Shown here: positions 1 through 19,598 of the stretch, in pieces
Numbering within the stretch: position 1 is the first letter of the stretch
Layout: every line of letters begins with the position of its first letter
NCBI RefSeq assembly: GCF_006345805.1
Contig: NW_021836407.1
Span: 1 to 19,598 of the forward strand
Length of the DNA: 19,598 bases
Reading direction: 5' to 3'
Source of the DNA: Octopus sinensis
Taxonomy: Eukaryota
Program-made: the position numbers and the translations under genes
The notes under the pieces: generated by a model
What the model was told of the DNA's origin: nothing
The model's input: the letters and a program-made list of their open reading frames with translations, nothing else
Database searches by the model: none

Positions 1-691
1 ATATCATATGCAAGGAACTTGTTAAATTACATAATATATTACGCAATTTATTACTCAATTTATTACATAATTCAAGTACCCCCATATCATATGCAAGGAA
101 CTTGTAAAATTACATAATAATATATTACGCAATTGATTACGCAATTTTTACTCAATTTATTACATAATCTCAATACCCCCATATCCTTACATCTACGGAC
201 CATCCAAATGCATAATATATTACGCAATTTATTACTCAATTATTACATAATCTCACACAGTACCCCCATATCATATGCAAGAACCTTGTTAAATTGCATA
301 ATATATTACGCAATTTATTACTCAATTTATTACATAATCTCAAGTACCCCATATCATATGCAAGGAACTTGTTAAATTGCATAATATATTACGCAATTTA
401 TTACTCATTTATTACATAATCTCAAGTACTCCCCATATCATATGCAAGGAACTTGTTAAATTGCATAATATATTACGCATTTTTACTCAATTTATTACAT
501 AGTCTCAAGTACCCCCATATTATATCACAGGAACTTGTTAAATTCATAATATATTACGCAATTTATTACTCAATTTATTACATAATCTCAAGTACCCCCA
601 TATCCTTACAACTACGGACCATCCAAAATTGCATAATATATTACGCAATTTATTACTCAATTTATTACATAATCTTAAGTACCCCCATATC
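1..691 (+). repeat. 84-bp AT-rich satellite block S0 (partial, ~8 monomers)
   Basis: Tandem copies of CTCAAGTACCCCCATATCATATGCAAGGAACTTGTTAAATT(A/G)CATAATATATTACGCAATTTATTACTCAATTTATTACATAAT. The consensus is about 26% GC (22/84). Includes variant B monomers at 186 and 605. Confidence 0.97.
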
Positions 692-3600
692 CTTACAACT
701 ACGGACCATCCAAACTACGGACCATCAAGACAATTGCACGTGCACGTTGTTGTTGTTGCTTTGTTGCTATTTCTTGTATTGTTGTTCATTATATTGTAAT
801 ATCGTTCTTTCTGATTTCCTTGTATCTTATATTCTTGTACTCATTGTTATATTCCTCAATTCTTGTATCTAATCTGTTTATGATCCCATCTCTTATTCAA
901 TCGTTTCAAACATTCGAATGCCTAATCTGCTCAACAAATAACACTCGCAAGAGGCGAGAAAGTGCTTTGACTGTCAGAGAGATGTGCACCTATCTTGTGC
1001 CGGCTTAACAAAGATGTCATCTGCAGCCCTCGCAATCTGGAAATGTCCAGCGTGTCTCAGTGCTTGTCCCCTAAAGCCAGCACCCCTTCAAAATCCCCCA
1101 CTCCCGTCTCGTCCGGTTGTTTGTGACATCCCCTTCGAAGATTTGTTATCTCTCTTTTGCCGGTCTGCGCCGCGCACGGAAGATATGCATAAAAATTCCG
1201 AAAGCAGCTCGGATTGCCGTCGCCGACTCGCTCACGAAGACCATTGTAAACGCCCTCGATTCTGACCAGCCTGCTGATTGGCTGAAATTATTTTGCTTTG
1301 GTCCCATGGCAATTGGCACACCCTACAGGGAACCTAATTCGAAGCAGCGCGGTTCCCTGACTTCGCAATTAAAGAAAATTTGACTCTCTTCGACAAAAAT
1401 CCATTCACGGTCCTTCCTACTCCCCCCGCTGAATTTGAGACCCCTTTAACGAATAAACCTGAACGCACAAACCTTCGTAATAAAGTCCACGCCAAGCTTA
1501 TGGAAAACGATGTTAAAGCTGCTGTTCGCCTTGTGGCTTCCGATGACGTTGTTCTACCTCCGTCGGAAGAGCTTCTCGAGGCACTCAAACTTAAACATCC
1601 GGCTGCCCCCACCGACCTCCGTGCTTTGCCAGTCCTCTCTGGAACCCCTACACATTCCTTTACGCCCTCGGAGATCTTAAGCTGCATCGCGAGTTTCCCC
1701 CTCAGCAGCAGTGGTGGCGTGGACGGTCTTCGTCCTGGCCACCTACGTGACCTGACGTCCCCGGTTACAGGCGAGGCAAGAACCCGCCTGGTGAAGGCAA
1801 TTACTGCTCTTTGCAATCGGTTCTTCTCCGGCGACCTTATCCCGTATGCACGTGACTTATTCTTCTCTGCCAATCTCACTGCCTTGAGGAAGACCGATGG
1901 TGGAGTTCGCCCCATCGCTGTCGGAAATGTCTTCAGGAGGCTGGCTGCTAAGCTTGCTTGCAGGCTCGTCTCTACTGATCTTGGCGCATTTTTCGGACCT
2001 GTTCAACTTGGAGTTGCTGTCAAGAATGGATGTGAAGGCGCCGCCCACGCAATGAGATGTTATATCGCCAATGCGTCAGCCGATTCTCGCCATGACAGGG
2101 CACTTCTCAAACTTGACATCAAGAACGCATTTAACTGCATCCGCCGGGATCACTTCTGTCAGTTTGCTTCGACCAGTTCCCCGTTTTGTATCCCCTGGCG
2201 CTATTGTCATATGGAAGACCTAGCTCTCTAGTATTCGGTTCGGATATTATTCCTTCAAGTACGGGAGTTCAACAGGGCGATCCACTAGGTCCCCTTCTCT
2301 TTGCCTTGGAAATAAATGGAATAGCTCGGTCGGTTTCTTCCGACTGAATATTTGGTATCTGGACGATGCCACTATTGGCGGCTCCCCAGAGACGATTTTA
2401 AGAGACGCTTTGTCGTTGGCACCTGCACTTCTGAGGATTGGATTGGAGATTAACCCCACCAAATCCGAATTAGTCGGTGTCAACATTCCTGATAAACGCC
2501 TTGACGACCTTTCATCGTCCCTCCGCACTGGTCTTGGCCAAGTGCGCGCGACTGACGTAAATGATCTCCGGATCCTTGGATCCCCCATCCTGCCGACTGC
2601 TATTAAGACTGATCTTCTTACCAAACATTCCACGTTAACTATTTTGCTGGACCGCCTCACGTTTTTGGACAGCCACGTCGGCCTGTTTCTTGCGAAAAAC
2701 TTTTTCGCCCTGCCTAAATTACTCTACTCCCTCAGAAGTGCACCTTGTTACCTACATGAGGACATTCTCACTGATCTCGGCGACTCCCTTCGTTCGAAGA
2801 TCGAATCAATATGCAATGTCGAGTTCGACTCTTTGGGGTGGAGTCAAGCTTCACTCCCCGTACGCCACGGAGGCCTTGGAATTCGGTGTCCGAATGATGT
2901 TGCACTGCCTGCCTACCTGTCGTCACTTTCTTCATGCCAGAAACTCATGGGCACGGTTCTTCCAACCGATTTTGAACATTACGTGCCCTCTGAGTTATCA
3001 TCGGCGGTCGTAAAGTGGCACTCGCTAGGACTGGAAATCCCAGAGGATCAGCATAAGCAATTTGTTTGGGACGAAGTCCGCCTACAATCCCGAATCCAAT
3101 CTTTACGTACATCTTTCGACCAACACCGCTTGGCCTGCTTTGAGACGGCATGTCGCCCTCACAGCGGAGCCTGGCTAAATGCCACTCCACTGCCGAGCAT
3201 TGGGAACCTTCTGGACTGCGAGTCCGTACGCACTGGAATCTTTTACGTCTCGGTCTTCGCCTATGCGAGCCACATGTCTGCCGCTGTGGCGCGAAAATCT
3301 GTCGCTTTGGATTGCACGCTCTATCGTGCAGACGCAGTGCTGGCCGCATCCCGCGTCACGCCGCTCTTAACGACCTTATCAGGAGAGCCCTGGAAGTCGC
3401 CGGAATCCCCTCCCTGCTTGAACCCACTGGGATCGATCGGGGAGACGGAAAAAGGCCTGACGGGATAACTGTGTTTCCTTTCAACAGGGGGAAGCCTCTC
3501 ACCTGGGATGCCACGTGTGTGGACTCTTTCTCGCCTCAGAACCTGCTGATGTCGGCCTCCGCTCCTGGATCTATTGTCACAACCGCGGAATGCAAAAAGA

Positions 3601-3877
3601 TGCGGAAGTACTCCTCACTTACGGAGAAGTTCCAATTCCTTCCATTCGCGGTTGAGACTTCCGGTTCCTTGGGCAGTAAGGCAATCAGCTTCGTTCAGGA
3701 GATCGGATCCCGCATGTCTGCCATCACAGGCGACGCCCGCGAATCGAGATGGTTTTTCGAGCGGATATCCTTGCGATAGAACGCTCTAATTCTTTCTCGA
3801 TCGCGTCGGCTTCCCGCACTTGAAGCTTTTAATTAATTAACTTGTAGTTATTGGTTGGTTTTCAAAAAAAAAAAAAA
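692..3877 (+). mobile_element. Full-length RLE-type non-LTR retrotransposon (CRE-like), copy 1
   Basis: Starts CTTACAACTACGGACC directly after the target motif at 671-691. Near-identical to copy 2 over its whole length. Ends in a 40-nt 3' UTR plus an A14 tail (3864-3877). Confidence 0.95.
880..3823 (+). pseudogene. PHD-RT-RLE ORF of copy 1, frameshifted as sequenced
   Basis: ATG at 880 and TGA at 3821-3823 match copy 2. About seven private 1-nt indels (near 951, 1148, 1376, 2157, 2343, 3240, 3770) split it into ORF-track fragments. These may be sequencing errors rather than true inactivation. Confidence 0.75.
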
Positions 3878-5942
3878 TCTCAATACCCCCATATCATATG
3901 CAAGGAACTTGTTAAATTACATAATATATTACGCAATTTATTACTCAATTAATTACATAATCTCAAGTACCTCCATATCATATGCAAGGAACTTGTTAAA
4001 TTACATAATATATTACGCAATTTATTACTCAATTTATTACATAATCTCAAGTACCCCCATATCATATGCAAGGAACTTGTTAAATTACATAATATATTAC
4101 GCAATTTATTACTCAATTTATTACATAATCTCAAGTACCCCCATATCATATGCAGGAACTTGTTAAATTGCATAATATATTACGCAATTTATTACTCAAT
4201 TTATTACATAATCTCAAGTACCCCCATATCATATGCAAGGAACTTGTTAAATTGCATAATATATTACGCAATTTATTACTCAATTTATTACATAATCTCA
4301 AGTACCCCCATATCATATGCAAGGAACTTGTTAAATTACATAATATATTACGCAATTTATTACTCAATTTATTACATAGTCTCAAGTACCCCCATATTAT
4401 ATGCAAGGAACTTGTTAAATTACATAATATATTACGCAATTGATTACGCAATTTATTACTCAATTTATTACATAATCTCATACCCCCATATCCTTAACAT
4501 CTACGGACCATCCAAAATTGCATAATATATTACGCAATTTATTACTCAATTTATTACATATCTCAAGTACCCCATATCATATGCAAGAACTTGTTAAATT
4601 GCATAATATATTACGCATTTATTACTCAATTTATTACATAGTCTCAAGTACCCCCATATTATATGCAAGGAACTTGTTAATTACATACATAACGCAAATT
4701 ACTATATTACAAATTCATTTCAATCTCAATTAATTACATATTATCTCGCAAGTCTTACCCCCATATTCAAGTACTAACAATGAAGAACTTGTTTTATCCT
4801 ACATAAAATATTACAGTTTTATCAAGAATATACGCAATTATTACTCAATTTATTACATAATCTCAAGTACCCCCATATCATATGCAAGGAACTTGTTAAA
4901 TTACATAATATATTACGCAATTTATTACTCAATTTATTACATAATCTCAAGTACCCCCATATCATACAAAGGACTTGTTAAATTACATAATATATTACGC
5001 AATTTATTACACAAGCAATTATACATATCTCAAGTACTCCCATATCCTACATCTACGGACCATCCAAATGCATAATATATTACGCAATTTATTACTCAAT
5101 TTATTACATAATCTCAAGTACCCCCATCATATGCAAGGAACTTGTAAATTACATAATATATTACGCAATTGATTACGCAATTTATTACTCAATATTACTA
5201 ATCTCAATACCCCCATATCCTTACATCTACGGACCTCCAATTGCATAATATATTACGCAATTTATTACTCAATTTATTACATAATCTCAAGTACCCCCAT
5301 ATCATATGCAAGAAACTTGTTAATTGCATAATATATTACGCAATTTATTACTCAATTTATTACATAATCCATAAATTACATAATATATTACGCAATTTAT
5401 TACAAAATTTATTACATAATCTCAAGTACCCCCATATCATATGCAAGGAACTTGTTAAATTGCATAATGTATTACGCAATTTATTACTCAATTTATTACA
5501 TAATCTCAAGTACCCCCATATCATATGCAAGGAACTTGTTAAATTACATAATATATTACGCAATTTATTACTCAATTAATTACATAATCTCAAGTACCCC
5601 CATATCATATGCAAGGAACTTGTTAAATTACATAATATATTACGCAATTTATTACTCAATTTATTACATAATCTTAAGTACCCCCATATCATATGCAAGG
5701 AACTTGTTAAATTACATAATATATTACGCAATTTATTACTCAATTTATTACATAATCTCAAGTACCCACATATCATATGCAAGGAACTTGTTAAATTGCA
5801 TAATATATTACGCAATTTATTACTCAATTTATTACATAGTCTCAAGTACCCCCATATCATATGCTAGGAACTTGTTAAATTACATAATATATTACGCAAT
5901 TTATTACTCAATTTATTACATAATCTCAAGTACCCCCATATC
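3878..5942 (+). repeat. 84-bp satellite block S1 (~24 monomers, 2065 bp)
   Basis: Period of 84 read directly (monomer starts at 5505, 5589, 5673, 5757, 5841). B monomers at 4493, 5047 and 5220. Degraded stretch at about 4680-4860. Confidence 0.97.
5922..5942 (+). repeat. 5' copy of apparent target-site duplication for element copy 2 (AATCTCAAGTACCCCCATATC)
   Basis: The same sequence follows the poly(A) at 9137/9139-9157. The equivalent motif precedes every copy (671-691, 10651-10670, 14967-14987, 19285-19305) and follows every tail (3878-3895, 13870-13888, 18176-18194). Confidence 0.75.
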
Positions 5943-6130
5943 CTTACAACTACGGACCATCCAAACTACGGACCATCAAGACAATTGCACGTGCACGTTG
6001 TTGTTGTTGCTTTGTTGCTATTTCTTGTATTGTTGTTCATTATATTGTAATATCGTTCTTTCTGATTTCCTTGTATCTTATATTCTTGTACTCATTGTTA
6101 TATTCCTCAATTCTTGTATCTAATCTGTTT

Positions 6131-9079
6131 ATGATCCCATCTCTTATTCAATCGTTTCAAACATTCGAATGCCTAATCTGCTCAACAAATAACACTCGCA
6201 AGAAGGCGAGAAAGTGCTTTGACTGTCAGAGAGATGTGCACCTATCTTGTGCCGGCTTAACAAAGATGTCATCTGCAGCCCTCGCAATCTGGAAATGTCC
6301 AGCGTGTCTCAGTGCTTGTCCCCTAAAGCCAGCACCCCTTCAAAATCCCCCACTCCCGTCTCGTCCGGTTGTTTGTGACATCCCCTTCGAAGATTTGTTA
6401 TCCTCTTTTGCCGGTCTGCGCCGCGCACGGAAGATATGCATAAAAATTCCGAAAGCAGCTCGGATTGCCGTCGCCGACTCGCTCACGAAGACCATTGTAA
6501 ACGCCCTCGATTCTGACCAGCCTGCTGATTGGCTGAAATTATTTTGCTTTGGTCCCATGGCAATTGGCACACCCTACAGGGAACCTAATTCGAAGCAGCG
6601 CGGTTCCCTGACTTCGCAATTAAAGGAAAATTTGACTCTCTTCGACAAAAATCCATTCACGGTCCTTCCTACTCCCCCCGCTGAATTTGAGACCCCTTTA
6701 ACGAATAAACCTGAACGCACAAACCTTCGTAATAAAGTCCACGCCAAGCTTATGGAAAACGATGTTAAAGCTGCTGTTCGCCTTGTGGCTTCCGATGACG
6801 TTGTTCTACCTCCGTCGGAAGAGCTTCTCGAGGCACTCAAACTTAAACATCCGGCTGCCCCCACCGACCTCCGTGCTTTGCCAGTCCTCTCTGGAACCCC
6901 TACACATTCCTTTACGCCCTCGGAGATCTTAAGCTGCATCGCGAGTTTCCCCCTCAGCAGCAGTGGTGGCGTGGACGGTCTTCGTCCTGGCCACCTACGT
7001 GACCTGACGTCCCCGGTTACAGGCGAGGCAAGAACCCGCCTGGTGAAGGCAATTACTGCTCTTTGCAATCGGTTCTTCTCCGGCGACCTTATCCCGTATG
7101 CACGTGACTTATTCTTCTCTGCCAATCTCACTGCCTTGAGGAAGACCGATGGTGGAGTTCGCCCCATCGCTGTCGGAAATGTCTTCAGGAGGCTGGCTGC
7201 TAAGCTTGCTTGCAGGCTCGTCTCTACTGATCTTGGCGCATTTTTCGGACCTGTTCAACTTGGAGTTGCTGTCAAGAATGGATGTGAAGGCGCCGCCCAC
7301 GCAATGAGATGTTATATCGCCAATGCGTCAGCCGATTCTCGCCATGACAGGGCACTTCTCAAACTTGACATCAAGAACGCATTTAACTGCATCCGCCGGG
7401 ATCACTTCCTGTCAGTTTGCTTCGACCAGTTCCCCGTTTTGTATCCCCTGGCGCTATTGTCATATGGAAGACCTAGCTCTCTAGTATTCGGTTCGGATAT
7501 TATTCCTTCAAGTACGGGAGTTCAACAGGGCGATCCACTAGGTCCCCTTCTCTTTGCCTTGGGAATAAATGGAATAGCTCGGTCGGTTTCTTCCGAACTG
7601 AATATTTGGTATCTGGACGATGCCACTATTGGCGGCTCCCCAGAGACGATTTTAAGAGACGCTTTGTCGTTGGCACCTGCACTTCTGAGGATTGGATTGG
7701 AGATTAACCCCACCAAATCCGAATTAGTCGGTGTCAACATTCCTGATAAACGCCTTGACGACCTTTCATCGTCCCTCCGCACTGGTCTTGGCCAAGTGCG
7801 CGCGACTGACGTAAATGATCTCCGGATCCTTGGATCCCCCATCCTGCCGACTGCTATTAAGACTGATCTTCTTACCAAACATTCCACGTTAACTATTTTG
7901 CTGGACCGCCTCACGTTTTTGGACAGCCACGTCGGCCTGTTTCTTGCGAAAAACTTTTTCGCCCTGCCTAAATTACTCTACTCCCTCAGAAGTGCACCTT
8001 GTTACCTACATGAGGACATTCTCACTGATCTCGGCGACTCCCTTCGTTCGAAGATCGAATCAATATGCAATGTCGAGTTCGACTCTTTGGGGTGGAGTCA
8101 AGCTTCACTCCCCGTACGCCACGGAGGCCTTGGAATTCGGTGTCCGAATGATGTTGCACTGCCTGCCTACCTGTCGTCACTTTCTTCATGCCAGAAACTC
8201 ATGGGCACGGTTCTTCCAACCGATTTTGAACATTACGTGCCCTCTGAGTTATCATCGGCGGTCGTAAAGTGGCACTCGCTAGGACTGGAAATCCCAGAGG
8301 ATCAGCATAAGCAATTTGTTTGGGACGAAGTCCGCCTACAATCCCGAATCCAATCTTTACGTACATCTTTCGACCAACACCGCTTGGCCTGCTTTGAGAC
8401 GGCATGTCGCCCTCACAGCGGAGCCTGGCTAAATGCCACTCCACTGCCGAGCATTGGGAACCTTCTGGACTGCGAGTCCGTACGCACTGGAATCTGTTTA
8501 CGTCTCGGTCTTCGCCTATGCGAGCCACATGTCTGCCGCTGTGGCGCGAAAATCTGTCGCTTTGGATTGCACGCTCTATCGTGCAGACGCAGTGCTGGCC
8601 GCATCCCGCGTCACGCCGCTCTTAACGACCTTATCAGGAGAGCCCTGGAAGTCGCCGGAATCCCCTCCCTGCTTGAACCCACTGGGATCGATCGGGGAGA
8701 CGGAAAAAGGCCTGACGGGATAACTGTGTTTCCTTTCAACAGGGGGAAGCCTCTCACCTGGGATGCCACGTGTGTGGACTCTTTCTCGCCTCAGAACCTG
8801 CTGATGTCGGCCTCCGCTCCTGGATCTATTGTCACAACCGCGGAATGCAAAAAGATGCGGAAGTACTCCTCACTTACGGAGAAGTTCCAATTCCTTCCAT
8901 TCGCGGTTGAGACTTCCGGTTCCTTGGGCAGTAAGGCAATCAGCTTCGTTCAGGAGATCGGATCCCGCATGTCTGCCATCACAGGCGACGCCCGCGAATC
9001 GAGATGGTTTTTCGAGCGGATATCCCTTGCGATAGAACGCTCTAATTCTTTCTCGATCGCGTCGGCTTCCCGCACTTGA
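6131..9079 (+). CDS. Non-LTR retrotransposon polyprotein: PHD finger + reverse transcriptase + zinc knuckle + restriction-like endonuclease (982 aa from first ATG; ORF track starts at TTG 6071)
   Basis: RT motifs GGVDG, RPIAVGNVFRRL, LDIKNAFN (D at 7367), QQGDPLGPLLF (7523), YLDD (7610-7621), GLEINPTKS and LRILGSPI. Also SLPVRHGGLG, the knuckle CRC-x9-H-x3-C, RHAALND, KRPDG, WDATC, KKMRKY and PFAVETSG. The CRE-clade assignment is from motif recognition, not a phylogeny. Confidence 0.96.
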   Translation: MIPSLIQSFQTFECLICSTNNTRKKARKCFDCQRDVHLSCAGLTKMSSAALAIWKCPACLSACPLKPAPLQNPPLPSRPVVCDIPFEDLLSSFAGLRRARKICIKIPKAARIAVADSLTKTIVNALDSDQPADWLKLFCFGPMAIGTPYREPNSKQRGSLTSQLKENLTLFDKNPFTVLPTPPAEFETPLTNKPERTNLRNKVHAKLMENDVKAAVRLVASDDVVLPPSEELLEALKLKHPAAPTDLRALPVLSGTPTHSFTPSEILSCIASFPLSSSGGVDGLRPGHLRDLTSPVTGEARTRLVKAITALCNRFFSGDLIPYARDLFFSANLTALRKTDGGVRPIAVGNVFRRLAAKLACRLVSTDLGAFFGPVQLGVAVKNGCEGAAHAMRCYIANASADSRHDRALLKLDIKNAFNCIRRDHFLSVCFDQFPVLYPLALLSYGRPSSLVFGSDIIPSSTGVQQGDPLGPLLFALGINGIARSVSSELNIWYLDDATIGGSPETILRDALSLAPALLRIGLEINPTKSELVGVNIPDKRLDDLSSSLRTGLGQVRATDVNDLRILGSPILPTAIKTDLLTKHSTLTILLDRLTFLDSHVGLFLAKNFFALPKLLYSLRSAPCYLHEDILTDLGDSLRSKIESICNVEFDSLGWSQASLPVRHGGLGIRCPNDVALPAYLSSLSSCQKLMGTVLPTDFEHYVPSELSSAVVKWHSLGLEIPEDQHKQFVWDEVRLQSRIQSLRTSFDQHRLACFETACRPHSGAWLNATPLPSIGNLLDCESVRTGICLRLGLRLCEPHVCRCGAKICRFGLHALSCRRSAGRIPRHAALNDLIRRALEVAGIPSLLEPTGIDRGDGKRPDGITVFPFNRGKPLTWDATCVDSFSPQNLLMSASAPGSIVTTAECKKMRKYSSLTEKFQFLPFAVETSGSLGSKAISFVQEIGSRMSAITGDARESRWFFERISLAIERSNSFSIASASRT
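6170..6307 (+). other. PHD finger (C4HC3) domain at the N-terminus of the ORF
   Basis: CLIC-x11-CFDC-x4-H-x2-C-x13-W-x-CPAC matches canonical PHD spacing, including the Trp two residues before the seventh ligand. Confidence 0.9.
8534..8866 (+). other. Zinc knuckle plus restriction-like endonuclease (RLE) catalytic region
   Basis: CxC..H..C at 8534-8584, RH at 8609, PD at 8711-8716, second Asp at 8762 and K-x2-KY at 8852-8866. This is the motif order typical of R2-group RLE domains. Confidence 0.9.
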
Positions 9080-9138
9080 AGCTTTTAATTAATTAACTTG
9101 TAGTTATTGGTTGGTTTTCAAAAAAAAAAAAAAAAAAA
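9080..9138 (+). other. 3' UTR (40 nt) and poly(A) tail
   Basis: AGCTTTTAATTAATTAACTTGTAGTTATTGGTTGGTTTTC followed by an A-run. Identical in copies 1-4, with tails of 14, 19, 23 and 21 A. Confidence 0.9.
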
Positions 9139-10670: not shown

Positions 10671-13600
10671 CTTACAACTACGGACCATCCAAACTACGGA
10701 CCATCAAGACAATTGCACGTGCACGTTGTTGTTTGTTGCTTTGTTGCTATTTCTTGTATTGTTGTTCATTATATTGTAATATCGTTCTTTCTGATTTCCT
10801 TGTATCTTATATTCTTGTACTCATTGTTATATTCCTCAATTCTTGTATCTAATCTGTTTATGATCCCATCTCTTATTCAATCGTTTCAAACATTCGAATG
10901 CCTAATCTGCTCAACAAATAACACTCGCAAGAAGCGAGAAAGTGCTTTGACTGTCAGAGAGATGTGCACCTATCTTGTGCCGGCTTAACAAAGATGTCAT
11001 CTGCAGCCCTCGCAATCTGGAAATGTCCAGCGTGTCTCAGTGCTTGTCCCCTAAAGCCAGCACCCCTTCAAAATCCCCCACTCCCGTCTCGTCCGGTTGT
11101 TTGTGACATCCCCTTCGAAGATTTGTTATCCTCTTTTGCCGGTCTGCGCCGCGCACGGAAGATATGCATAAAAATTCCGAAAGCAGCTCGGATTGCCGTC
11201 GCCGACTCGCTCACGAAGACCATTGTAAACGCCCTCGATTCTGACCAGCCTGCTGATTGGCTGAAATTATTTTGCTTTGGTCCCATGGCAATTGGCACAC
11301 CCTACAGGGAACCTAATTCGAAGCAGCGCGGTTCCCTGACTTCGCAATTAAAGGAAAATTTGACTCTCTTCGACAAAAATCCATTCACGGTCCTTCCTAC
11401 TCCCCCCGCTGAATTTGAGACCCCTTTAACGAATAACCTGAACGCACAAACCTTCGTAATAAAGTCCACGCCAAGCTTATGGAAAACGATGTTAAGCTGC
11501 TGTTCGCCTTGTGGCTTCCGATGACGTTGTTCTACCTCCGTCGGAAGAGCTTCTCGAGGCACTCAAACTTAAACATCCGGCTGCCCCCACCGACCTCCGT
11601 GCTTTGCCAGTCCTCTCTGGAACCCCTACACATTCCTTTACGCCCTCGGAGATCTTAAGCTGCATCGCGAGTTTCCCCCTCAGCAGCAGTGGTGGCGTGG
11701 ACGGTCTTCGTCCTGGCCACCTACGTGACCTGACGTCCCCGGTTACAGGCGAGGCAAGAACCCGCCTGGTGAAGGCAATTACTGCTCTTGCAATTTTCTC
11801 GGTTCTTCTCCGGCGACCTTATCCCGTATGCACGTGACTTATTCTTCTCTGCCAATCTCACTGCATTGAGGAAGACCGATGGTGGAGTTCGCCCCATCGC
11901 TGTCGGAAATGTCTTCAGGAGGCTGGCTGCTAAGCTTGCTTGCAGGCTCGTCTCTACTGATCTTGGCGCATTTTTCGGACCTGTTCAACTTGGAGTTGCT
12001 GTCAAGAATGGATGTGAAGGCGCCGCCCACGCAATGAGATGTTATATCGCCAATGCGTCAGCCGATTCTCGCCATGACAGGGCACTTCTCAAACTTGACA
12101 TCAAGAACGCATTTAACTGCATCCGCCGGGATCACTTCCTGTCAGTTTGCTTCGACCAGTTCCCCCCGTTTTGTATCCCCTGGCGCTATTGTCATATGGA
12201 AGACCTAGCTCTCTAGTATTCGGTTCGGATATTATTCCTTCAAGTACGGGAGTTCAACAGGGCGATCCACTAGGTCCCCTTCTCTTTGCCTTGGGAATAA
12301 ATGGAATAGCTCGGTCGGTTTCTTCCGAACTGAATATTTGGTATCTGGACGATGCCACTATTGCGGCTCCCCAGAGACGATTTTAAGAGACGCTTTGTCG
12401 TTGGCACCTGCACTTCTGAGGATTGGATTGGAGATTAACCCCACCAAATCCGAATTAGTCGGTGTCAACATTCCTGATAAACGCCTTGACGACCTTTCAT
12501 CGTCCCTCCGCACTGGTCTTGGCCAAGTGCGCGCGACTGACGTAAATGATCTCCGGATCCTTGGATCCCCCATCCTGCCGACTGCTATTAAGACTGATCT
12601 TCTTACCAAACATTCCACGTTAACTATTTTGCTGGACCGCCTCACGTTTTTGGACAGCCACGTCGGCCTGTTTCTTGCGAAAAACTTTTTCCCCTGCCTA
12701 AATTACTCTACTCCCTCAGAAGTGCACCTTGTTGCCTACATGAGGACATTCTCACTGATCTCGGCGACTCCCTTCGTTCGAAGATCGAATCAATATGCAA
12801 TGTCGAGTTCGACTCTTTGGGGTGGAGTCAAGCTTCACTCCCCGTACGCCACGGAGGCCTTGGAATTCGGTGTCCGAATGATGTTGCACTGCCTGCCTAC
12901 CTGTCGTCACTTTCTTCATGCCAGAAACTCATGGGCACGGTTCTTCCAACCGATTTTGAACATTACGTGCCCTCTGAGTTATCATCGGCGGTCGTAAAGT
13001 GGCACTCGCTAGGACTGGAATCCCAGAGGATCAGCATAAGCAATTTGTTTGGGACGAAGTCCGCCTACAATCCCGAATCCAATCTTTACGTACATCTTTC
13101 GACCAACACCGCTTGGCCTGCTTTGAGACGGCATGTCGCCCTCACAGCGGAGCCTGGCTAAATGCCACTCCACTGCCGAGCATTGGGAACCTTCTGGACT
13201 GCGAGTCCGTACGCACTGGAATCTGTTTACGTCTCGGTCTTCGCCTATGCGAGCCACATGTCTGCCGCTGTGGCGCGAAAATCTGTCGCTTTGGATTGCA
13301 CGCTCTATCGTGCAGACGCAGTGCTGGCCGCATCCCGCGTCACGCGCGCTCTTAACGACCTTATCAGGAGAGCCCTGGAAGTCGCCGGAATCCCCTCCCT
13401 GCTTGAACCCACTGGGATCGATCGGGGAGACGGAAAAAGGCCTGACGGGATAACTGTGTTTCCTTTCAACAGGGGGAAGCCTCTCACCTGGGATGCCACG
13501 TGTGTGACTCTTTCTCGCCTCAGAACCTGCTGATTCGGCCTCCGCTCCTGGATCTATTGTCACAACCGCGGAATGCAAAAAGATGCGGAAGTACTCCTCA

Positions 13601-13869
13601 CTTACGGAGAAGTTCCAATTCCTTCCATTCGCGGTTGAGACTTCCGGTTCCTTGGGCAGTAAGGCAATCAGCTTCGTTCAGGAGATCGATCCCGCATGTC
13701 TGCCATCACAGGCGACGCCCGCGAATCGAGATGGTTTTTCGAGCGGATATCCCTTGCGATAGAACGCTCTAATTCTTTCTCGATCGCGTCGGCTTCCCGC
13801 CCTTGAAGCTTTTAATTAATTAACTTGTAGTTATTGGTTGGTTTTCAAAAAAAAAAAAAAAAAAAAAAA
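10671..13869 (+). mobile_element. Full-length CRE-like retrotransposon, copy 3
   Basis: Same 5' junction, body and 3' UTR as copy 2. A23 tail at 13847-13869. Confidence 0.95.
10860..13806 (+). pseudogene. PHD-RT-RLE ORF of copy 3, frameshifted as sequenced
   Basis: ATG at 10860 and TGA at 13804-13806. Multiple private small indels, while all domain motifs remain visible in the ORF fragments. Possibly sequencing error. Confidence 0.75.
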
Positions 13870-14987
13870 TCTCAAGTACCCCCATATCATATGCAAGAAC
13901 TTGTTAATTAACTTTTTAAATACATAATCTATTACGCAATTTATTACTCAATTTATTACATATCTCAAGTACCCCCATATTATATGCAAGGAACTTGTTA
14001 AATTACATAATATATTACGCAATTTAATTACTCAATTAATTACATAATCTTAAGTACCCCCATATCATATGCAAGGAACTTGTTAAATACATAATATTAC
14101 GCAATTTATTACTCAATTATTACATAATCTCAAGTACCCCTATCATATGCAAGGAACTTGTTAAATTACATAATAATTACGCAATTTATTACGCAATTTA
14201 TTACATAATCTCAAGTACCCCCATATCTTACATCTACGGATCATCCAAAATTGCTAATATATTACGCAATTAATACATATCTCAAGTACCCCAATATCAT
14301 ATGCAAGGAACTTGTTAAATTACATAATATATTACGCAATTTATTACTCAATTTATTACATAATCTCAAGTACCCCCATATCATATGCAAGGAACTTGTA
14401 AAATTACATAATATATTACGCAATTTATTACGCAATTTATTACTCAATTTATTACATAATCTCAATACCCCCATATCCTTACATCTACGGACCATCCAAA
14501 ATTGCATAATATATTACGCAATTTATTACTCAATTTATTACATAATCTCAAGTACCCCCATATCATATGCAAGAAACTTGTTAAATTGCATAATATATTA
14601 CGCAATTTATTACTCAATTTATTACATAATCTCAAGTACCCCCATATCATATGCAAGGAACTTGTTAAATTGCATAATATATTACGCAATTTATTACTCA
14701 ATTTATTACATAATCTCAAGTACCCCCATATCATATGCAAGGAACTTGTTAAATTGCATAATATATTACGCAATTTATTACTCAATTTATTACATAATCT
14801 CAAGTACTCCCATATCCTTACATCTACGGACCATCCAAAATTGCATAATATATTACGCAATTTATTACTCAATTTATTACATAATCTCAAGTACCCCCAT
14901 ATCATATGCTAGGAACTTGTTAAATTACATAATATATTACGCAATTTATTACTCAATTTATTACATAATCTCAAGTACCCCCATATC
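13870..14987 (+). repeat. 84-bp satellite block S3 (13 monomers, 1118 bp)
   Basis: Tandem monomers with B monomers at 14227, 14478 and 14817. Confidence 0.97.
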
Positions 14988-17900
14988 CTTACAACTACGG
15001 ACCATCCAAACTACGGACCATCAAGACAATTGCACGTGCACGTTGTTGTTGTTGCTTTGTTGCTATTTCTTGTATTGTTGTTCATTATATTGTAATATCG
15101 TTCTTTCTGATTTCCTTGTATCTTATATTCTTGTACTCATTGTTATATTCCTCAATTCTTGTATCTAATCTGTTTATGATCCCATCTCTTATTCAATCGT
15201 TTCAAACATTCGAATGCCTAATCTGCTCAACAAATAACACTCGCAAGAAGGCGAGAAAGTGCTTTGACTGTCAGAGAGATGTGCACCTATCTTGTGCCGG
15301 CTTAACAAAGATGTCATCTGCAGCCCTCGCAATCTGGAAATGTCCAGCGTGTCTCAGTGCTTGTCCCCTAAAGCCAGCACCCCTTCAAAATCCCCACTCC
15401 CGTCTCGTCCGGTTGTTTGTGACATCCCCTTCGAAGATTTGTTATCCTCTTTTGCCGGTCTGCGCCGCGCACGGAAGATATGCATAAAAATTCCGAAAGC
15501 AGCTCGGATTGCCGTCGCCGACTCGCTCACGAAGACCATTGTAAACGCCCTCGATTCTGACCAGCCTGCTGATTGGCTGAAATTATTTTGCTTTGGTCCC
15601 ATGGCAATTGGCACACCCTACAGGGAACCTAATTCGAAGCAGCGCGGTTCCCTGACTTCGCAATTAAAGGAAAATTTGACTCTCTTCGACAAAATCCATT
15701 CACGGTCCTTCCTACTCCCCCCGCTGAATTTGAGACCCCTTTAACGAATAAACCTGAACGCACAAACCTTCGTAATAAAGTCCACGCCAAGCTTATGGAA
15801 AACGATGTTAAAGCTGCTGTTCGCGCTTGTGGCTTCCGATGACGTTGTTCTACCTCCGTCGGAAGAGCTTCTCGAGGCACTCAAACTTAAACATCCGGCT
15901 GCCCCCACCGACCTCCGTGCTTTGCCAGTCCTCTCTGGAACCCCTACACATTCCTTTACGCCCTCGGAGATCTTAAGCTGCATCGCGAGTTTCCCCCTCA
16001 GCAGCAGTGGTGGCGTGGACGGTCTTCGTCCTGGCCACCTACGTGACCTGACGTCCCCGGTTACAGGCGAGGCAAGAACCCGCCTGGTGAAGGCAATTAC
16101 TGCTCTTTGCAATCGGTTCTTCTCCGCGACCTATCCCGTATGCACGTGACTTATTCTTCTCTGCCAATCTCACTGCATTGAGGAAGACCGATGGTGGAGT
16201 TCGCCCCATCGCTGTCGGAAATGTCTTCAGGAGGCTGGCTGCTAAGCTTGCTTGCAGGCTCGTCTCTACTGATCTTGGCGCATTTTTCGGACCTGTTCAA
16301 CTTGGAGTTGCTGTCAAGATGGATGTGAAGGCGCCGCCCACGCAATGAGATGTTATATCGCCAATGCGTCAGCCGATTCTCGCCATGACAGGGCACTTCT
16401 CAAACTTGACATCAAGAACGCATTTAACTGCATCCGCCGGGATCACTTCCTGTCAGTTTGCTTCGACCAGTTCCCCGTTTTGTATCCCCTGGCGCTATTG
16501 TCATATGGAAGACCTAGCTCTCTAGTATTCGGTTCGGATATTATTCCTTCAAGTACGGGAGTTCAACAGGGCGATCCACTAGGTCCCCTTCTCTTTGCCT
16601 TGGGAATAAATGGAATAGCTCGGTCGGTTTCTTCCGAACTGAATATTTGGTATCTGGACGATGCCACTATTGGCGGCTCCCCAGAGACGATTTTAAGAGA
16701 CGCTTTGTCGTTGGCACCTGCACTTCTGAGGATTGGATTGGAGATTAACCCCACCAAATCCGAATTAGTCGGTGTCAACATTCTGATAAACGCCTTGACG
16801 ACCTTTCATCGTCCCTCCGCACTGGTCTTGGCCAAGTGCGCGCGACTGACGTAAATGATCTCCGGATCCTTGGATCCCCCATCCTGCCGACTGCTATTAA
16901 GACTGATCTTCTTACCAAACATTCCACGTTAACTATTTTGCTGGACCGCCTCACGTTTTGGACAGCCACGTCGGCCTGTTTCTTGCGAAAAACTTTTTCG
17001 CCCTGCCTAAATTACTCTACTCCCTCAGAAGTGCACCTTGTTGCCTACATGAGGACATTCTCACTGATCTCGGCGACTCCCTTCGTTCGAAGATCGAATC
17101 AATATGCAATGTCGAGTTCGACTCTTTGGGGTGGAGTCAAGCTTCACTCCCCGTACGCCACGGAGGCCTTGGAATTCGGTGTCCGAATGATGTTGCACTG
17201 CCTGCCTACCTGTCGTCACTTTCTTCATGCCAGAAACTCATGGGCACGGTTCTTCCAACCGATTTTGAACATTACGTGCCCTCTGAGTTATCATCGGCGG
17301 TCGTAAAGTGGCACTCGCTAGGACTGGAAATCCCAGAGGATCAGCATAAGCAATTTGTTTGGGACGAAGTCCGCCTACAATCCCGAATCCAATCTTACGT
17401 ACATCTTTCGACCAACACCGCTTGGCCTGCTTTGAGACGGCATGTCGCCCTCACAGCGGAGCCTGGCTAAATGCCACTCCACTGCCGAGCATTGGGAACC
17501 TTCTGGACTGCGAGTCCGTACGCACTGGAATCTGTTTACGTCTCGGTCTTCGCCTATGCGAGCCACATGTCTGCCGCTGTGGCGCGAAAATCTGTCGCTT
17601 TGGATTGCACGCTCTATCGTGCAGACGCAGTGCTGGCCGCATCCCGCGTCACGCCGCTCTTAACGACCTTATCAGGAGAGCCCTGGAAGTCGCCGGAATC
17701 CCCTCCCTGCTTGAACCCACTGGGATCGATCGGGGAGACGGAAAAAGGCCTGACGGGATAACTGTGTTTCCTTTCAACAGGGGGAAGCCTCTCACCTGGG
17801 ATGCCACGTGTGTGGACTCTTTCTCGCCTCAGAACCTGCTGAGTCGGCCTCCGCTCCTGGATCTATTGTCACAAGCGGAATGCAAAAAGATGCGGAAGTA

Positions 17901-18175
17901 CTCCTCACTTACGGAGAAGTTCCAATTCCTTCCATTCGCGGTTGAGACTTCCGGTTCCTTGGGCAGTAAGGCAATCAGCTTTGTTCAGGAGATCGGATCC
18001 CGCATGTCTGCCATCACAGGCGACGCCCGCGAATCGAGATGGTTTTTCGAGCGGATATCCCTTGCGATAGAACGCTCTAATTCTTTCTCGATCGCGTCGG
18101 CTTCCCGCACTTGAAGCTTTTAATTAATTAACTTGTAGTTATTGGTTGGTTTTCAAAAAAAAAAAAAAAAAAAAA
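14988..18175 (+). mobile_element. Full-length CRE-like retrotransposon, copy 4
   Basis: Same 5' junction, body and 3' UTR as copy 2. A21 tail at 18155-18175. Confidence 0.95.
15176..18114 (+). pseudogene. PHD-RT-RLE ORF of copy 4, frameshifted as sequenced
   Basis: ATG at 15176 and stop at 18114, with the same C-terminus SIASASRT. Many private 1-2 nt deletions, possibly sequencing error. Confidence 0.75.
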
Positions 18176-19305
18176 TCTCAAGTACCCCCATATCATATGC
18201 AAGGAACTTGTTAAAATTAACTAACTTGTTAAATACATAATATATTACGCAATTTATTACTCAATTTAATTACATAATCTCAAGTACCCCCATATCATAT
18301 GCAAGGAACTTGTTAAATACATAATATATTACGCAATTTATTACTCAATTAATTACATAATCTTAAGTACCCCCATCATCATATGCAAGGAACTTGTTAA
18401 ATTACATAATATTACGCAATTTATTACTCAATTTATTACATAATCTCAAGTACCCCACATATCATATGCAAGGAACTTGTTAAATTACATAATATTACGC
18501 AATTTATTACGCAATTATTACATAATCTCAAGTACCCATATCCTTACATCTACGATCATCCAAAATTGCTAATATATTACGCAATTTAATACATAATCTC
18601 AAGTACCCCAATATCATATGCAAGGAACTTGTTAAATTACATAATATATTACGCAATTTATTACTCAATTTATTACATAATTTCAAGTACCCCATATCAT
18701 ATGCAAGGAACTTTGTAAATTACATAATATATTACGCAATTGATTACGCAATTTATTACTCATATATATGAATTATTACATAATCTCAAACCCCATATCC
18801 TTACATCTACGGACCATCCAAAATTGCATAATATATTACGCAATTATTACTCATTTATTACATAATCTCAAGTACCCCCATATCATATGCAAGAAACTTG
18901 TTAATTGCCATAATATATTACGCAATTTATTACTCAATTATTACATAATCTCAAGTACCCCCATATCATATGCAAGGAACTTGTTAAATTGCATAATATA
19001 TTACGCAATTTATTACTCAATTTATTACATAATCTCAAGTACTCCCATATCATATGCAAGGAACTTGTTAAATTGCATAATATATTACGCAATTTATTAC
19101 TCAATTATTACATAATCTCAAGTACTCCCATATCCTTACATCTACGGACCATCCAAAATTGCATAATATATTACGCAATTTATTACTCAATTTATTACAT
19201 AATCTCAAGTACCCCCATATCATATGCTAGGAACTTGTTAAATTACATAATATATTACGCAATTTATTACTCAATTTATTACATAATCTCAAGTACCCCC
19301 ATATC
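18176..19305 (+). repeat. 84-bp satellite block S4 (13 monomers, 1130 bp)
   Basis: Same order of variant monomers as S3. B monomers at 18543, 18800 and 19135. Noisier sequence. Confidence 0.96.
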
Positions 19306-19598
19306 CTTACAACTACGGACCATCCAAACTACGGACCATCAAGACAATTGCACGTGCACGTTGTTGTTGTTGCTTTGTTGCTATTTCTTGTATTGTGTTC
19401 ATTATTTGTAATATCGTTCTTTCTGATCCTTGTATCTTATATTCTGTACTCATGTTATATTTCCTCAATTCTTGTATCTAATCTGTTTATGATCCCATCT
19501 CTTATTCAATCGTTTCAAACATTCGAATGCCTAATCTGCTCAACAAATAACACTCGCAAGAAGGCGAGAAAGTGCTTTGACTGTCAGAGAGATGTGCA
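19306..19598 (+). mobile_element. CRE-like retrotransposon copy 5, 5' part only (cut by window end)
   Basis: Same 5' junction and leader. ATG at 19489 and the start of the PHD finger (CLIC...CFDC). Confidence 0.93.

What the first reader, a model, noticed from the sequence alone, without database searches (positions are those of the whole stretch)
692..19598. Satellite-targeted CRE-like retrotransposon forming a composite element-satellite array
Seen: five copies, all in the same orientation, each entering the 84-bp monomer at the same nucleotides. The 5' side is ...CCCCCATATC|CTTACAAC and the 3' side is poly(A)|TCTCAAGTACCCCCATATC. The elements make up about two thirds of the window. Known: RLE-bearing elements are often sequence-specific. 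R2 targets 28S rDNA, Utopia U2 snRNA genes, trypanosomatid CRE/SLACS/CZAR spliced-leader genes, and MoTeR telomeric repeats. Inference: this family's target is a complex satellite, and together they build a heterochromatic, possibly centromeric or subtelomeric, domain. I cannot tell whether this family has been described.
Basis: partly seen in the sequence, partly recalled or inferred. Interest (0 to 1): 0.82.

Follow-up and report, generated by a model that had tools for sequence, protein, structure and literature searches.

The report
Retrotransposon co-amplified with its satellite
A CRE-type jumping gene sits five times at the same spot of an 84-bp satellite repeat, but the copies share their flanking repeats too, so most likely one insertion was copied along with the satellite rather than five targeted hits.

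Summary
Four full copies (about 3.19 kb) and one copy cut by the window end lie on the + strand. They interrupt an 84-bp AT-rich satellite at identical junctions and make up 66.6% of the window.

The element is a non-LTR retrotransposon with one ORF: a PHD-type finger, RT, a CCHC motif and a restriction-like endonuclease, then poly(A). Its predicted fold matches R2 proteins end to end. Its RT groups with Cre-1_BM (LINE/CRE-II, 100% bootstrap) and with SLACS/CZAR/CRE1/CRE2 (97%). "CRE-like" is therefore supported.

The five copies are not independent samples of target choice:
- The order of satellite monomer variants next to the elements is shared between units.
- One 5.8-kb stretch of satellite plus element repeats with only 12 mismatches.
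- A rare monomer variant (GCTAGG) occurs only directly upstream of three elements.
- Element substitutions group the copies as the flanks do.

The best reading is one insertion, or very few, amplified as a 4.3-5.3 kb higher-order repeat by unequal exchange. Satellite-specific targeting is neither shown nor excluded. The closest multi-copy relative family is dispersed in unrelated, non-satellite DNA.

One puzzle remains: the element's first 23-47 nt also occur in 14 satellite monomers.

The parts
1..691 (+). Satellite block S0: 84-bp AT-rich monomers. Includes B-type monomers at 167-252 and 585-671.
   Evidence: TRF period 83-84; monomer decomposition.
692..3877 (+). Element copy E1 (3186 nt, poly(A) 14). 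It differs from the consensus by 7 one-base indels and 1 substitution.
3878..5942 (+). Satellite block S1 (about 25 monomers). Includes degenerate stretches at 4641-4859 and 5284-5418. The GCTAGG-variant monomer lies at 5839-5922.
5943..9138 (+). Element copy E2 (3196 nt). It is identical to the consensus of the four full copies and is the only copy with an uninterrupted ORF. Poly(A) at 9120-9138.
5943..5989 (+). 5' leader of the element. Nt 1-23 are shared with B-type satellite monomers. A second copy of CTACGGACCATC starts 16 nt after the first, and AATTGCA at nt 41-47 matches the point where B-type monomers return to common satellite sequence. This stretch may be satellite, not element.
6131..9079 (+). 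ORF of 982 aa (ATG to stop).
   Evidence: Translation. Homologues 49% identical and below. AF2 model pLDDT 91.8. Foldseek top hits are R2 proteins over about 900-970 aligned columns.
6170..6307 (+). PHD-type (C4HC3) zinc finger, residues 14-59.
   Evidence: Pfam PHD E 0.0049, below the curated cut-off. PDB PHD fingers E 0.002-0.02. PF00628 is on record for several homologues.
7139..7729 (+). Reverse transcriptase domain, residues 337-533, with YLDD.
   Evidence: Pfam RVT_1 E 1.3e-15; invariant residues in A1/A2.
8534..8854 (+). CCHC motif and restriction-like endonuclease: C802-x-C804-x9-H814-x3-C818, R827-H828, E849, R860-P861-D862, D878, K908.
   Evidence: C802, C804, H814, C818, R827, H828, E849, R860, P861, D862 and D878 are invariant, and K908 is conserved in at least 90%, of 59 homologues. 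The order matches the REL-ENDO motif quoted in PMC12857005. The whole-protein fold matches R2.
9139..10670 (+). Satellite block S2 (about 18 monomers). Its last 13 units recur in the same order in S3 and S4.
10671..13869 (+). Element copy E3 (3199 nt, poly(A) 23); 19 gapped alignment columns and 5 substitutions against the consensus.
13870..14987 (+). Satellite block S3 (about 13 monomers). GCTAGG-variant monomer at 14884-14967.
14988..18175 (+). Element copy E4 (3188 nt, poly(A) 21); 12 indels and 3 substitutions. Two of the substitutions are shared with E3.
18176..19305 (+). Satellite block S4 (about 13 monomers, same variant order as S3). GCTAGG-variant monomer at 19202-19285.
19306..19598 (+). 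Element copy E5: the first 293 nt only, cut by the window end. Its apparent mismatches are indel artefacts.

Best explanation
The element is a member of the CRE clade of non-LTR retrotransposons, in the metazoan CRE-II / Cre-1_BM-like lineage. It has one 982-aa ORF with a PHD-type finger, RT, a CCHC motif and a restriction-like endonuclease, and it moves by target-primed reverse transcription.

One copy, or at most very few, inserted into an 84-bp AT-rich satellite. Unequal exchange between satellite monomers then duplicated the element together with 13-25 neighbouring monomers. This built a higher-order repeat of 4.3-5.3 kb in which every element has the same orientation and the same junctions by descent.

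Shown here:
- the element's class and intact domains;
- co-inheritance of flanks and elements.

Inferred:
- the single origin of all five copies;
- unequal crossing-over as the copying process.

A sequence-specific preference of the endonuclease for this monomer is not needed to explain the window.
For: Class:
- phmmer of the ORF scores Cre-1_BM at 394 bits, CRE2 at 66, SLACS at 57, CZAR at 53.5 and CRE1 at 45. Utopia scores 24 and R2 at most 18. HERO and Dong/R4 give no hit.
- The NJ tree gives 100% bootstrap with Cre-1_BM and 97% with the trypanosomatid CRE elements.
- The fold matches R2 proteins over the whole length.
- The RLE motif residues are conserved: all invariant across 59 homologues except K908, which is nearly invariant.

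Co-amplification:
- 9557-15285 aligns with 13868-19598 over 5786 nt with only 12 mismatches. This stretch includes more than 2 kb of satellite, whose monomers otherwise match at only 77-89%.
- The monomer-variant order of S3 equals S4 and the last 13 units of S2.
- The 420 nt upstream of E3, E4 and E5 best match each other in register: 1-4 mismatches, against 13-20 elsewhere.
- The GCTAGG variant occurs three times among about 75 monomers. Each time it is the last full monomer before an element (E2, E4, E5). My estimate of the chance of that is about 1.5e-4.
- Two element substitutions group E1/E2 against E3/E4, as the flanks do.
- No 5'-truncated or inverted copies are present.

Precedent: same-strand, high-identity TE copies with identical TSDs inside satellite arrays are read as one integration copied by host recombination (bioRxiv 10.64898/2026.09.17.752431).

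Relatives: the nearest multi-copy family (50% aa identity) has three copies, 97% identical to each other, in three different non-satellite flanks.
Against: - Co-duplicated flanks differ more than the elements do. For example, S1 against S2 monomers 1-6 show 4 mismatches in about 504 nt, while E1 against E2 show 1 in 3185. This could mean gene conversion among monomers, polishing errors in the satellite, homogenisation of the elements, or later element replacement.
- The upstream flanks of E1 and E2 are not co-linear with those of E3-E5 beyond the last monomer. A second insertion cannot be excluded.
- CRE-clade elements are classically site-specific (PMC12278014; PMC4640811).
- The element's first 23-47 nt match a satellite monomer variant at exactly the junction position. 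This hints at a longer association between the family and the satellite.
- E2's ORF is intact.
Confidence: 0.65

Rival explanations
1. The family really is specific for this satellite, in the way SLACS/CRE are for spliced-leader genes. The RLE and N-terminal domain would recognise the monomer and nick near CATAA/TCTCAAG, and the second nick would fall about 19 bp downstream. The leader at the RNA's 5' end, which resembles the satellite, would help to seal the 5' junction. The array would combine repeated targeted insertions with satellite homogenisation.
For: - The element belongs to the CRE clade, whose classical members insert at one position of a tandemly repeated gene.
- RLE clades are mostly target-specific.
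- The junctions are identical and precise, with a 19-nt overlap.
- 14 monomers carry the leader's first 23 nt at the junction position.
- Elements are more alike than their co-duplicated flanks.
- The ORF is intact.
- E1 and E2 have upstream contexts unlike those of E3-E5.
Against: - Every copy can be linked to another copy by shared flank variants, so the window holds no demonstrably independent insertion.
- There are no 5'-truncated copies, which targeted LINEs usually leave.
- The N-terminal finger is PHD-type, which as a rule reads histone tails rather than DNA sequence (the functional statement is my general knowledge).
- The nearest relatives are dispersed in non-satellite DNA.
- Only 4 of 80 metagenome relatives have any tandem repeat beside the ORF.
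- The relatives share no common flank or RNA gene.
Confidence: 0.25
2. The 'satellite' is the element's own 5' region. In this reading a long array of 84-bp monomers acts as leader or promoter, as in mouse L1, and the window is a head-to-tail array of such long elements rather than an insertion into a pre-existing satellite.
For: - The leader is homologous to B-type monomers.
- The orientation of elements relative to monomers is constant.
- A few relatives have tandem repeats just upstream of the ORF: L008, L031 and L046.
Against: - Composition differs sharply: 27-30% GC in the satellite against 50-54% in the element.
- The blocks hold 13-25 monomers with their own higher-order variants and degenerate stretches.
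- Each block starts and ends so that 19 nt overlap, as a target-site duplication would.
- The closest relatives have short, non-repetitive 5' ends.
Confidence: 0.05
3. The repeated units are an assembly artefact: a long-read assembler expanded or mis-joined a single element-satellite junction.
For: - Nearly all differences between element copies are one-base deletions in short homopolymers, typical of unpolished long reads.
- Errors rise toward the window end.
Against: The units differ in length (5251, 4728, 4317 and 4318 nt), in monomer number, in substitutions and in poly(A) length, and these differences are internally consistent.
Confidence: 0.04

Closest known systems
Cre-1_BM (RepeatMasker/Repbase class LINE/CRE-II, Bombyx mori)
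   Same: This is the best reference match: 394 bits, 38% identity over 562 aa covering RT to CCHC. It falls in the same 100%-bootstrap clade. The YLDD RT and the 'GLHxLSC' CCHC region are shared.
   Different: Only 38% identical and from a different host. The segment available to me lacks the N-terminus and the RLE, so the PHD finger and the target habits of Cre-1_BM could not be compared.
SLACS / CZAR / CRE1 / CRE2 (trypanosomatid CRE clade)
   Same: Sister group in the RT tree (97%). They also have a single ORF with RT and a C-terminal RLE, a poly(A) tail, and residence in a tandem array at one fixed position.
   Different: Their target is the spliced-leader RNA gene; here no RNA gene is present. 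They carry ZF-like motifs, with C2H2-type fingers reported in the related FoTeRs, whereas this element has a PHD-type finger. Their site-specificity rests on many independent copies, which is not shown here.
R2 (28S rDNA-specific RLE element; cryo-EM structures 8gh6, 9nl3, 9dou)
   Same: The whole-protein fold matches (E 5e-23, about 900-970 aligned columns). The mechanism, target-primed reverse transcription by an RLE-RT protein, is presumably the same.
   Different: The RT sequence is far away (at most 18 bits). There is no Myb/C2H2 N-terminus, no 28S target, and no HDV-like ribozyme was found at the 5' junction.
Tandemly copied transposons inside centromeric satellite arrays (Gypsy in Anoplius nigerrimus, 11 LINEs in Porphyrio hochstetteri; bioRxiv 10.64898/2026.09.17.752431)
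   Same: [quoted passage not shown]
   Different: Different element classes and hosts. A centromeric location is unknown for this window.
YURE in U2-derived satellite (Ciona) and Utopia/U2 tandem arrays (Phytophthora)
   Same: RLE-type LINEs that interrupt tandem repeats and form mixed arrays (PMC4640811).
   Different: They belong to the NeSL clade, and their target derives from a U2 snRNA gene.
MoTeR / FoTeR telomeric CRE-clade elements
   Same: CRE-related RT and REL-ENDO domains, residence in simple tandem repeats, and 5' ends flanked by target-like motifs.
   Different: They are fungal, their target is the telomere repeat, and they carry C2H2 fingers.

Membership tests
CRE clade of non-LTR retrotransposons (incl. 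RepeatMasker LINE/CRE-II) | RT groups with CRE references rather than with R2, NeSL/Utopia, HERO or R4/Dong. | tested here: met
   phmmer scores: Cre-1_BM 394 bits, CRE2 66, SLACS 57, CZAR 53.5, CRE1 45. Utopia scores 24, R2 at most 18, and HERO and Dong give nothing. NJ bootstrap is 100% with Cre-1_BM and 97% with the trypanosomatid CRE elements. The references were taken from supplements of PMC5678591 and PMC7650587.
CRE clade of non-LTR retrotransposons (incl. RepeatMasker LINE/CRE-II) | Single ORF with RT followed by a CCHC motif and a PD-(D/E)XK restriction-like endonuclease. | tested here: met
   One 982-aa ORF; RVT_1 domain. The motif residues are C802, C804, H814, C818, R827-H828, E849, R860-P861-D862, D878 and K908; all are invariant in 59 homologues except K908, which is nearly invariant. 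Their order is as in the REL-ENDO consensus, with spacers 1-2 residues outside the quoted ranges. The fold matches R2 across RT, linker and RLE. The C-terminal 223 aa alone gave no PDB sequence hit.
CRE clade of non-LTR retrotransposons (incl. RepeatMasker LINE/CRE-II) | 3' poly(A) tail. | tested here: met
   A14, A19, A23 and A21 at the four complete 3' ends.
CRE clade of non-LTR retrotransposons (incl. RepeatMasker LINE/CRE-II) | N-terminal zinc finger(s); ZF-like in trypanosomatid CRE elements and C2H2-type in the related FoTeRs. | tested here: not met
   A finger is present, but it has a C4HC3 PHD-type pattern. Pfam PHD E 0.0049, PDB PHD fingers E 0.002-0.02, and no C2H2 hit.
CRE clade of non-LTR retrotransposons (incl. 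RepeatMasker LINE/CRE-II) | Insertion at a fixed position of spliced-leader RNA genes (classical SLACS/CZAR/CRE1/2). | tested here: not met
   No Rfam family at gathering threshold in the window, none of relevance at E up to 10 around E2, and no tRNA. The interrupted unit is an 84-bp AT-rich satellite.
Target-specific (site-specific) non-LTR retrotransposon | Independent insertions at the same nucleotide of the target. | tested here: inconclusive
   The junctions are identical, but the copies share flanking monomer haplotypes and so are not independent. E1 and E2 have partly different upstream contexts.
Target-specific (site-specific) non-LTR retrotransposon | Copies are rare or absent outside the target across the genome. 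| not testable with these tools
   The source genome is in none of the collections. The exact protein is not on record. Junction and satellite patterns are absent from metagenome contigs and genome contigs. The best protein hit is 49% identical.
Target-specific (site-specific) non-LTR retrotransposon | Related families share the target or show their own fixed target. | tested here: not met
   Relatives L002, L004 and L005 have no satellite. Three copies of the nearest multi-copy family have three different flanks. The 85 loci share no flank, and no RNA gene lies beside 18 of them.
R2 clade | RT groups with R2; ZF/Myb N-terminus; 28S rDNA target. | tested here: not met
   R2 references score at most 18 bits and fall in another clade. 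PDB R2 sequences reach only E 5e-5 over the RT. There is no rRNA in the window. Only the overall fold is shared.
Composite TE-satellite higher-order repeat (one integration copied by host recombination) | Same strand, identical junctions, flanking satellite variants duplicated together with the element, and element relationships congruent with flank relationships. | tested here: met
   the criterion is as used in bioRxiv 10.64898/2026.09.17.752431.

The most novel reading that the evidence does not exclude
This would be a metazoan-type CRE-II element that has specialised on one 84-bp satellite. Its RNA would carry a satellite-derived leader (nt 1-47) that anneals to the target to seal the 5' junction. 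The 14 'B-type' monomers would be footprints of earlier insertions at the same nucleotide, so the element would be actively writing monomer variants into the satellite. Its PHD finger could add chromatin-level guidance to heterochromatin.
Probability: 0.2. Interest if true: 0.65.

Novelty: new member of a known kind. Interest (0 to 1): 0.35.

Why it matters
Identical junctions inside a tandem array are not, by themselves, evidence of target specificity. The flanking monomer haplotypes must be checked first, and here they show co-amplification.

The window is a clean example of a retrotransposon becoming part of a satellite's higher-order repeat. That is one route by which transposons and satellites interconvert.

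If later genome-wide data did show true targeting, the element would extend the CRE-clade habit of living in tandem repeats from spliced-leader genes and telomeres to a complex satellite. It would also offer a compact RLE-RT protein (982 aa, confidently modelled) with a new target.

The PHD-type finger in an RLE-type LINE and the leader shared with a monomer variant are worth a specialist's look either way.

Tried and rejected
- **Ribozyme at the 5' junction:** I looked for an HDV-like or other ribozyme, as in R2. A permissive Rfam scan of 5400-9400 gave only chance hits.
- **Known RNA gene as target:** no Rfam family at gathering threshold and no tRNA in the window.
- **Same genome elsewhere:** the exact protein is not on record. 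The junction pattern is absent from metagenome contigs and the satellite pattern from genome contigs. No census of copies was therefore possible.
- **Satellite association across relatives:**
  - The three closest long loci have none.
  - 80 metagenome loci were fetched. Only 4 have tandem repeats beside the ORF.
  - The loci share no flank.
  - No RNA gene lies next to the 18 loci scanned.
- **PDB sequence search with the C-terminal 223 aa:** no RLE hit. The whole-protein fold search succeeded instead.
- **Bacterial promoter and terminator scan:** irrelevant for a eukaryotic repeat, so ignored.
- **Tree building:** the first tree run timed out. The second was invalid because the Kimura distance was undefined for very distant pairs, which gave a ladder in input order. 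I discarded both and repeated the tree with Poisson distances.
- **First CRE comparison:** it used OCR-damaged sequences and was superseded by clean FASTA references.
- **Is the B-type segment a diverged A-type segment?** Similarity is 10 of 20 positions, not significant (p about 0.08), so the origin stays open.
- **Frameshifts in E1, E3 and E4 as evidence of decay:** rejected. They are one-base homopolymer deletions typical of long-read error.


Full report
**1. What is in the window**

TRF finds an 83-84-bp AT-rich satellite in five blocks: S0 1-691, S1 3878-5942, S2 9139-10670, S3 13870-14987 and S4 18176-19305. The blocks are separated by GC-richer segments of about 3.19 kb. GC is about 27-30% in the satellite and about 50-54% in the inserts.

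A motif search places the inserts at 692-3877 (E1), 5943-9138 (E2), 10671-13869 (E3) and 14988-18175 (E4). A fifth, E5, starts at 19306 and is cut by the window end. All lie on the + strand.

Each insert starts CTTACAACTACGGACC directly after ...CCCCCATATC. Each full copy ends in A14-A23 followed by TCTCAAGTACCCCCATATC. The inserts make up 13,062 of 19,598 nt (66.6%).

The 19 nt TCTCAAGTACCCCCATATC lie on both sides of each element and look like a target-site duplication. In an 84-bp tandem array this cannot be told apart from a 65-bp target loss.

**2. What the element is**

E2 carries an uninterrupted ORF, 6131-9079, of 982 aa. The evidence for its domains is:
- Pfam finds RVT_1 (E 1.3e-15) and a sub-threshold PHD finger.
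- PDB sequence search finds PHD fingers for residues about 7-72 and only weak R2 and L1 RT matches.
- The protein database holds hundreds of homologues. None is closer than 49% identity. They include Octopus and Plutella proteins and many marine, soil and freshwater metagenome contigs of about element length.
- Alignment of 59 homologues shows invariant RT residues (YLDD). At the C-terminus it shows C802-x-C804-x9-H814-x3-C818, R827-H828, E849, R860-P861-D862, D878 and K908. All of these are invariant except K908, which is conserved in at least 90% of the sequences.
- That is the order of the REL-ENDO motif of RLE elements as quoted in PMC12857005, with spacers 1-2 residues outside the quoted ranges.
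- An AlphaFold2 model is confident (pLDDT 91.8, pTM 0.86).
- Its best structural matches are R2 retrotransposon proteins, aligned over about 900-970 columns (E 5e-23). L1 ORF2p matches only through the RT.

For clade assignment I took reference protein segments from two supplements: PMC7650587 and, as clean FASTA, PMC5678591.
- phmmer of the ORF scores Cre-1_BM (RepeatMasker class LINE/CRE-II, Bombyx mori) at 394 bits, with 38% identity over 562 aa.
- It scores CRE2 at 66, Cre-1_HM at 63, SLACS at 57, CZAR at 53.5 and CRE1 at 45.
- Utopia scores 24 and R2 at most 18. HERO and Dong/R4 give nothing.
- An NJ tree (380 columns, 300 bootstraps) puts the window element with Cre-1_BM and the database homologues at 100%.
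- It joins that group to the trypanosomatid CRE elements at 97%, apart from HERO, R4/Dong, NeSL/Utopia and R2.

"CRE-like" is therefore supported. More precisely, the element belongs to the CRE-II lineage, which is already catalogued. It departs from classical CRE elements in two ways. The finger is PHD-type rather than the ZF-like motifs reported for trypanosomatid CRE elements or the C2H2 fingers of the related FoTeRs. And no spliced-leader or other RNA gene lies at the insertion site.

**3. Are the five copies independent insertions?**

No. Five lines of evidence point the same way.
- **(a) Element identity.** The elements differ by 0-5 substitutions from their consensus, and E2 equals the consensus. 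Nearly all other differences are one-base deletions in short homopolymers, the signature of long-read error rather than decay.
- **(b) Monomer-variant order.** Cutting the satellite into monomers shows that the order of variants is conserved between units. S3 and S4 are co-linear with the last 13 units of S2. The first six monomers of S1 parallel those of S2.
- **(c) Long self-alignments.** Self-megablast aligns 9557-15285 with 13868-19598 over 5786 nt with only 12 mismatches. That stretch includes more than 2 kb of satellite, although monomers within an array match at only 77-89%. Other unit pairs align over 5.1-6.0 kb at 92.8-95.2%.
- **(d) Flank matching.** The 420 nt upstream of E3, E4 and E5 best match one another in exact register (1-4 mismatches). 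The next-best places have 13-20 mismatches. The flanks downstream of E3 and E4 match each other, and also match S2 displaced by five monomers. S3 and S4 are thus S2 with an internal deletion.
- **(e) Rare variant and substitutions.** The monomer variant ATGCTAGG occurs three times among about 75 monomers. Each time it is the last complete monomer before an element (E2, E4, E5). By my calculation the chance of that placement is about 1.5e-4. Two element substitutions (alignment columns 1201 and 2072) split E1/E2 from E3/E4, as the flanks do.

The units are 5251, 4728, 4317 and 4318 nt long. This is the pattern expected when a composite unit is copied by unequal exchange. A recent survey of centromeres interprets the same pattern as one integration followed by copying through host recombination. 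Its examples are five same-strand Gypsy copies with identical TSDs, and eleven LINEs in a bird satellite.

**4. Is the family nevertheless satellite-specific?**

This cannot be decided here. The source genome is in none of the collections.

Evidence that lowers the prior:
- The closest long loci (47-50% identity) contain no satellite.
- The nearest multi-copy family (50% identity) has 21 members, at least 90% identical to each other, on different large contigs of one assembly.
- Three copies of that family are 97% identical over 3.2 kb. They have three unrelated non-satellite flanks, and one copy is 5'-truncated.
- Among 80 metagenome loci, only four show tandem repeats beside the ORF.
- The 85 loci share no flank, and no RNA gene adjoins the 18 loci scanned.
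- PHD fingers usually read histone tails, not DNA sequence (my general knowledge).

Evidence that raises it:
- Classical CRE elements are strictly site-specific in tandem gene arrays, and most RLE clades are target-specific.
- The element bodies are more alike than their co-duplicated flanks. For example, E1 and E2 differ at 1 of 3185 nt, while the first six monomers downstream differ at 4 of about 504 nt.
- E1 and E2 have upstream contexts that are not co-linear with those of E3-E5 beyond the last monomer.

I put satellite-specific targeting at about 0.25.

**5. An unexplained detail that bears on the boundary**

Fourteen monomers ("B-type") replace the usual ATATGCAAGGAACTTGTTAA after CCCCCATATC with CTTACATCTACGGACCATCCAAA. 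Their CTACG motifs start at 193, 612, 4501, 5053, 5227, 9920, 10173, 10509, 14234, 14485, 14824, 18550, 18807 and 19142. They rejoin the common sequence at ATTGCATAATAT.

That segment equals the element's first 23 nt except at position 7. The monomer at 585-671 matches position 7 as well. The element then has a second copy of CTACGGACCATC, starting 16 nt after the first, followed by AATTGCA at nt 41-47. After that, unrelated sequence begins.

B-type monomers fall into at least three subtypes, each fixed at its own position in the higher-order repeat. They therefore predate the last amplification.

There are two readings:
- The element's true 5' end is at nt 48. It inserted into a B-type monomer after AATTGCA, with loss of about 37-39 bp of target.
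- B-type monomers are 5' footprints of the element, produced by deletion through the AATTGCA microhomology.

The A-type and B-type segments are not significantly similar (10 of 20 positions, p about 0.08), so I cannot choose between them. Copies outside the satellite would settle it.

**6. Other rivals**

- **The satellite is the element's own 5' monomer array.** This is unlikely. The composition contrast is sharp, the blocks have their own higher-order structure, the block ends overlap in phase, and the relatives have short non-repetitive 5' ends.
- **Assembly artefact.** This is unlikely because the units differ consistently in length, monomer number, substitutions and poly(A) length.

**7. 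Verdict**

The central inference, targeting of the satellite, is not supported by this window.

The most likely history is one chance or weakly preferred insertion of a CRE-II LINE into a satellite, followed by co-amplification as a 4.3-5.3 kb higher-order repeat. This is a new member of known kinds, both of the element clade and of the composite-repeat phenomenon. Interest is moderate to low, with a modest chance of a more interesting targeted system.

Noticed in passing
window 136-691, 3876-5942 and the other satellite blocks: About 36-48 nt of each 84-bp monomer are built from 12-nt sub-repeats (ATTACGCAATTT / ATTACTCAATTT / ATTACATAATCT). Some monomers are 96 nt long because they carry one extra sub-repeat. 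The satellite probably grew from a 12-mer.
   Followed up: partly
window 4641-4859 and 5284-5418: S1 has two irregular stretches. One is a 219-nt degenerate monomer pair. The other is a 135-nt monomer with an internal duplication of about 52 nt. They mark places where the higher-order order of S1 departs from that of S2-S4.
   Followed up: no
window 585-691: The B-type monomer directly upstream of E1 is the only one with CTTACAAC, the element's own spelling. It looks like a recombinant between an element leader and a satellite monomer.
   Followed up: partly
window, all element copies; worst at 19306-19598: Differences between copies are almost all one-base deletions in runs of 2-5 identical bases, and they become denser toward the window end. 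The sequence looks like an incompletely polished long-read assembly, possibly a contig end. The frameshifts in E1, E3 and E4 should not be read as real.
   Followed up: yes
window 5452-6123, 9111-9764, 14251-15168 (+ strand ORFs): ORFs of 217-305 codons run through the satellite. An 84-nt period is 28 codons and the monomer has a stop-free frame. They are not genes.
   Followed up: yes
proteins P0020, P0025, P0107; P0059, P0117; P0082: Some homologues of the ORF carry extra N-terminal domains on record: ubiquitin hydrolase (PF00443/PF13423), SAP (PF02037) or PF02257. The N-terminal module of this clade appears to be exchangeable.
   Followed up: no
L005 9342-9986: An inverted repeat of about 650 nt beside a relative of the element holds two type I hammerhead ribozymes on opposite strands (48.9 and 41.6 bits). 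It is probably a Penelope-like element or retrozyme, unrelated to the finding.
   Followed up: no
L008 154-480, L031 6-348, L046 940-1619, L064 2948-3083: Four distant relatives (36-38% identity) have 36-189-nt tandem repeats just outside the ORF match. They could be 5'-UTR repeats or target repeats. The contigs are too short to tell.
   Followed up: no
L086 999-2042 and 8762-9805: The same pair of called genes (177 aa with HTH_animal, then 147 aa) appears on both sides of the relative's copy. That copy may sit inside another repeated element.
   Followed up: no
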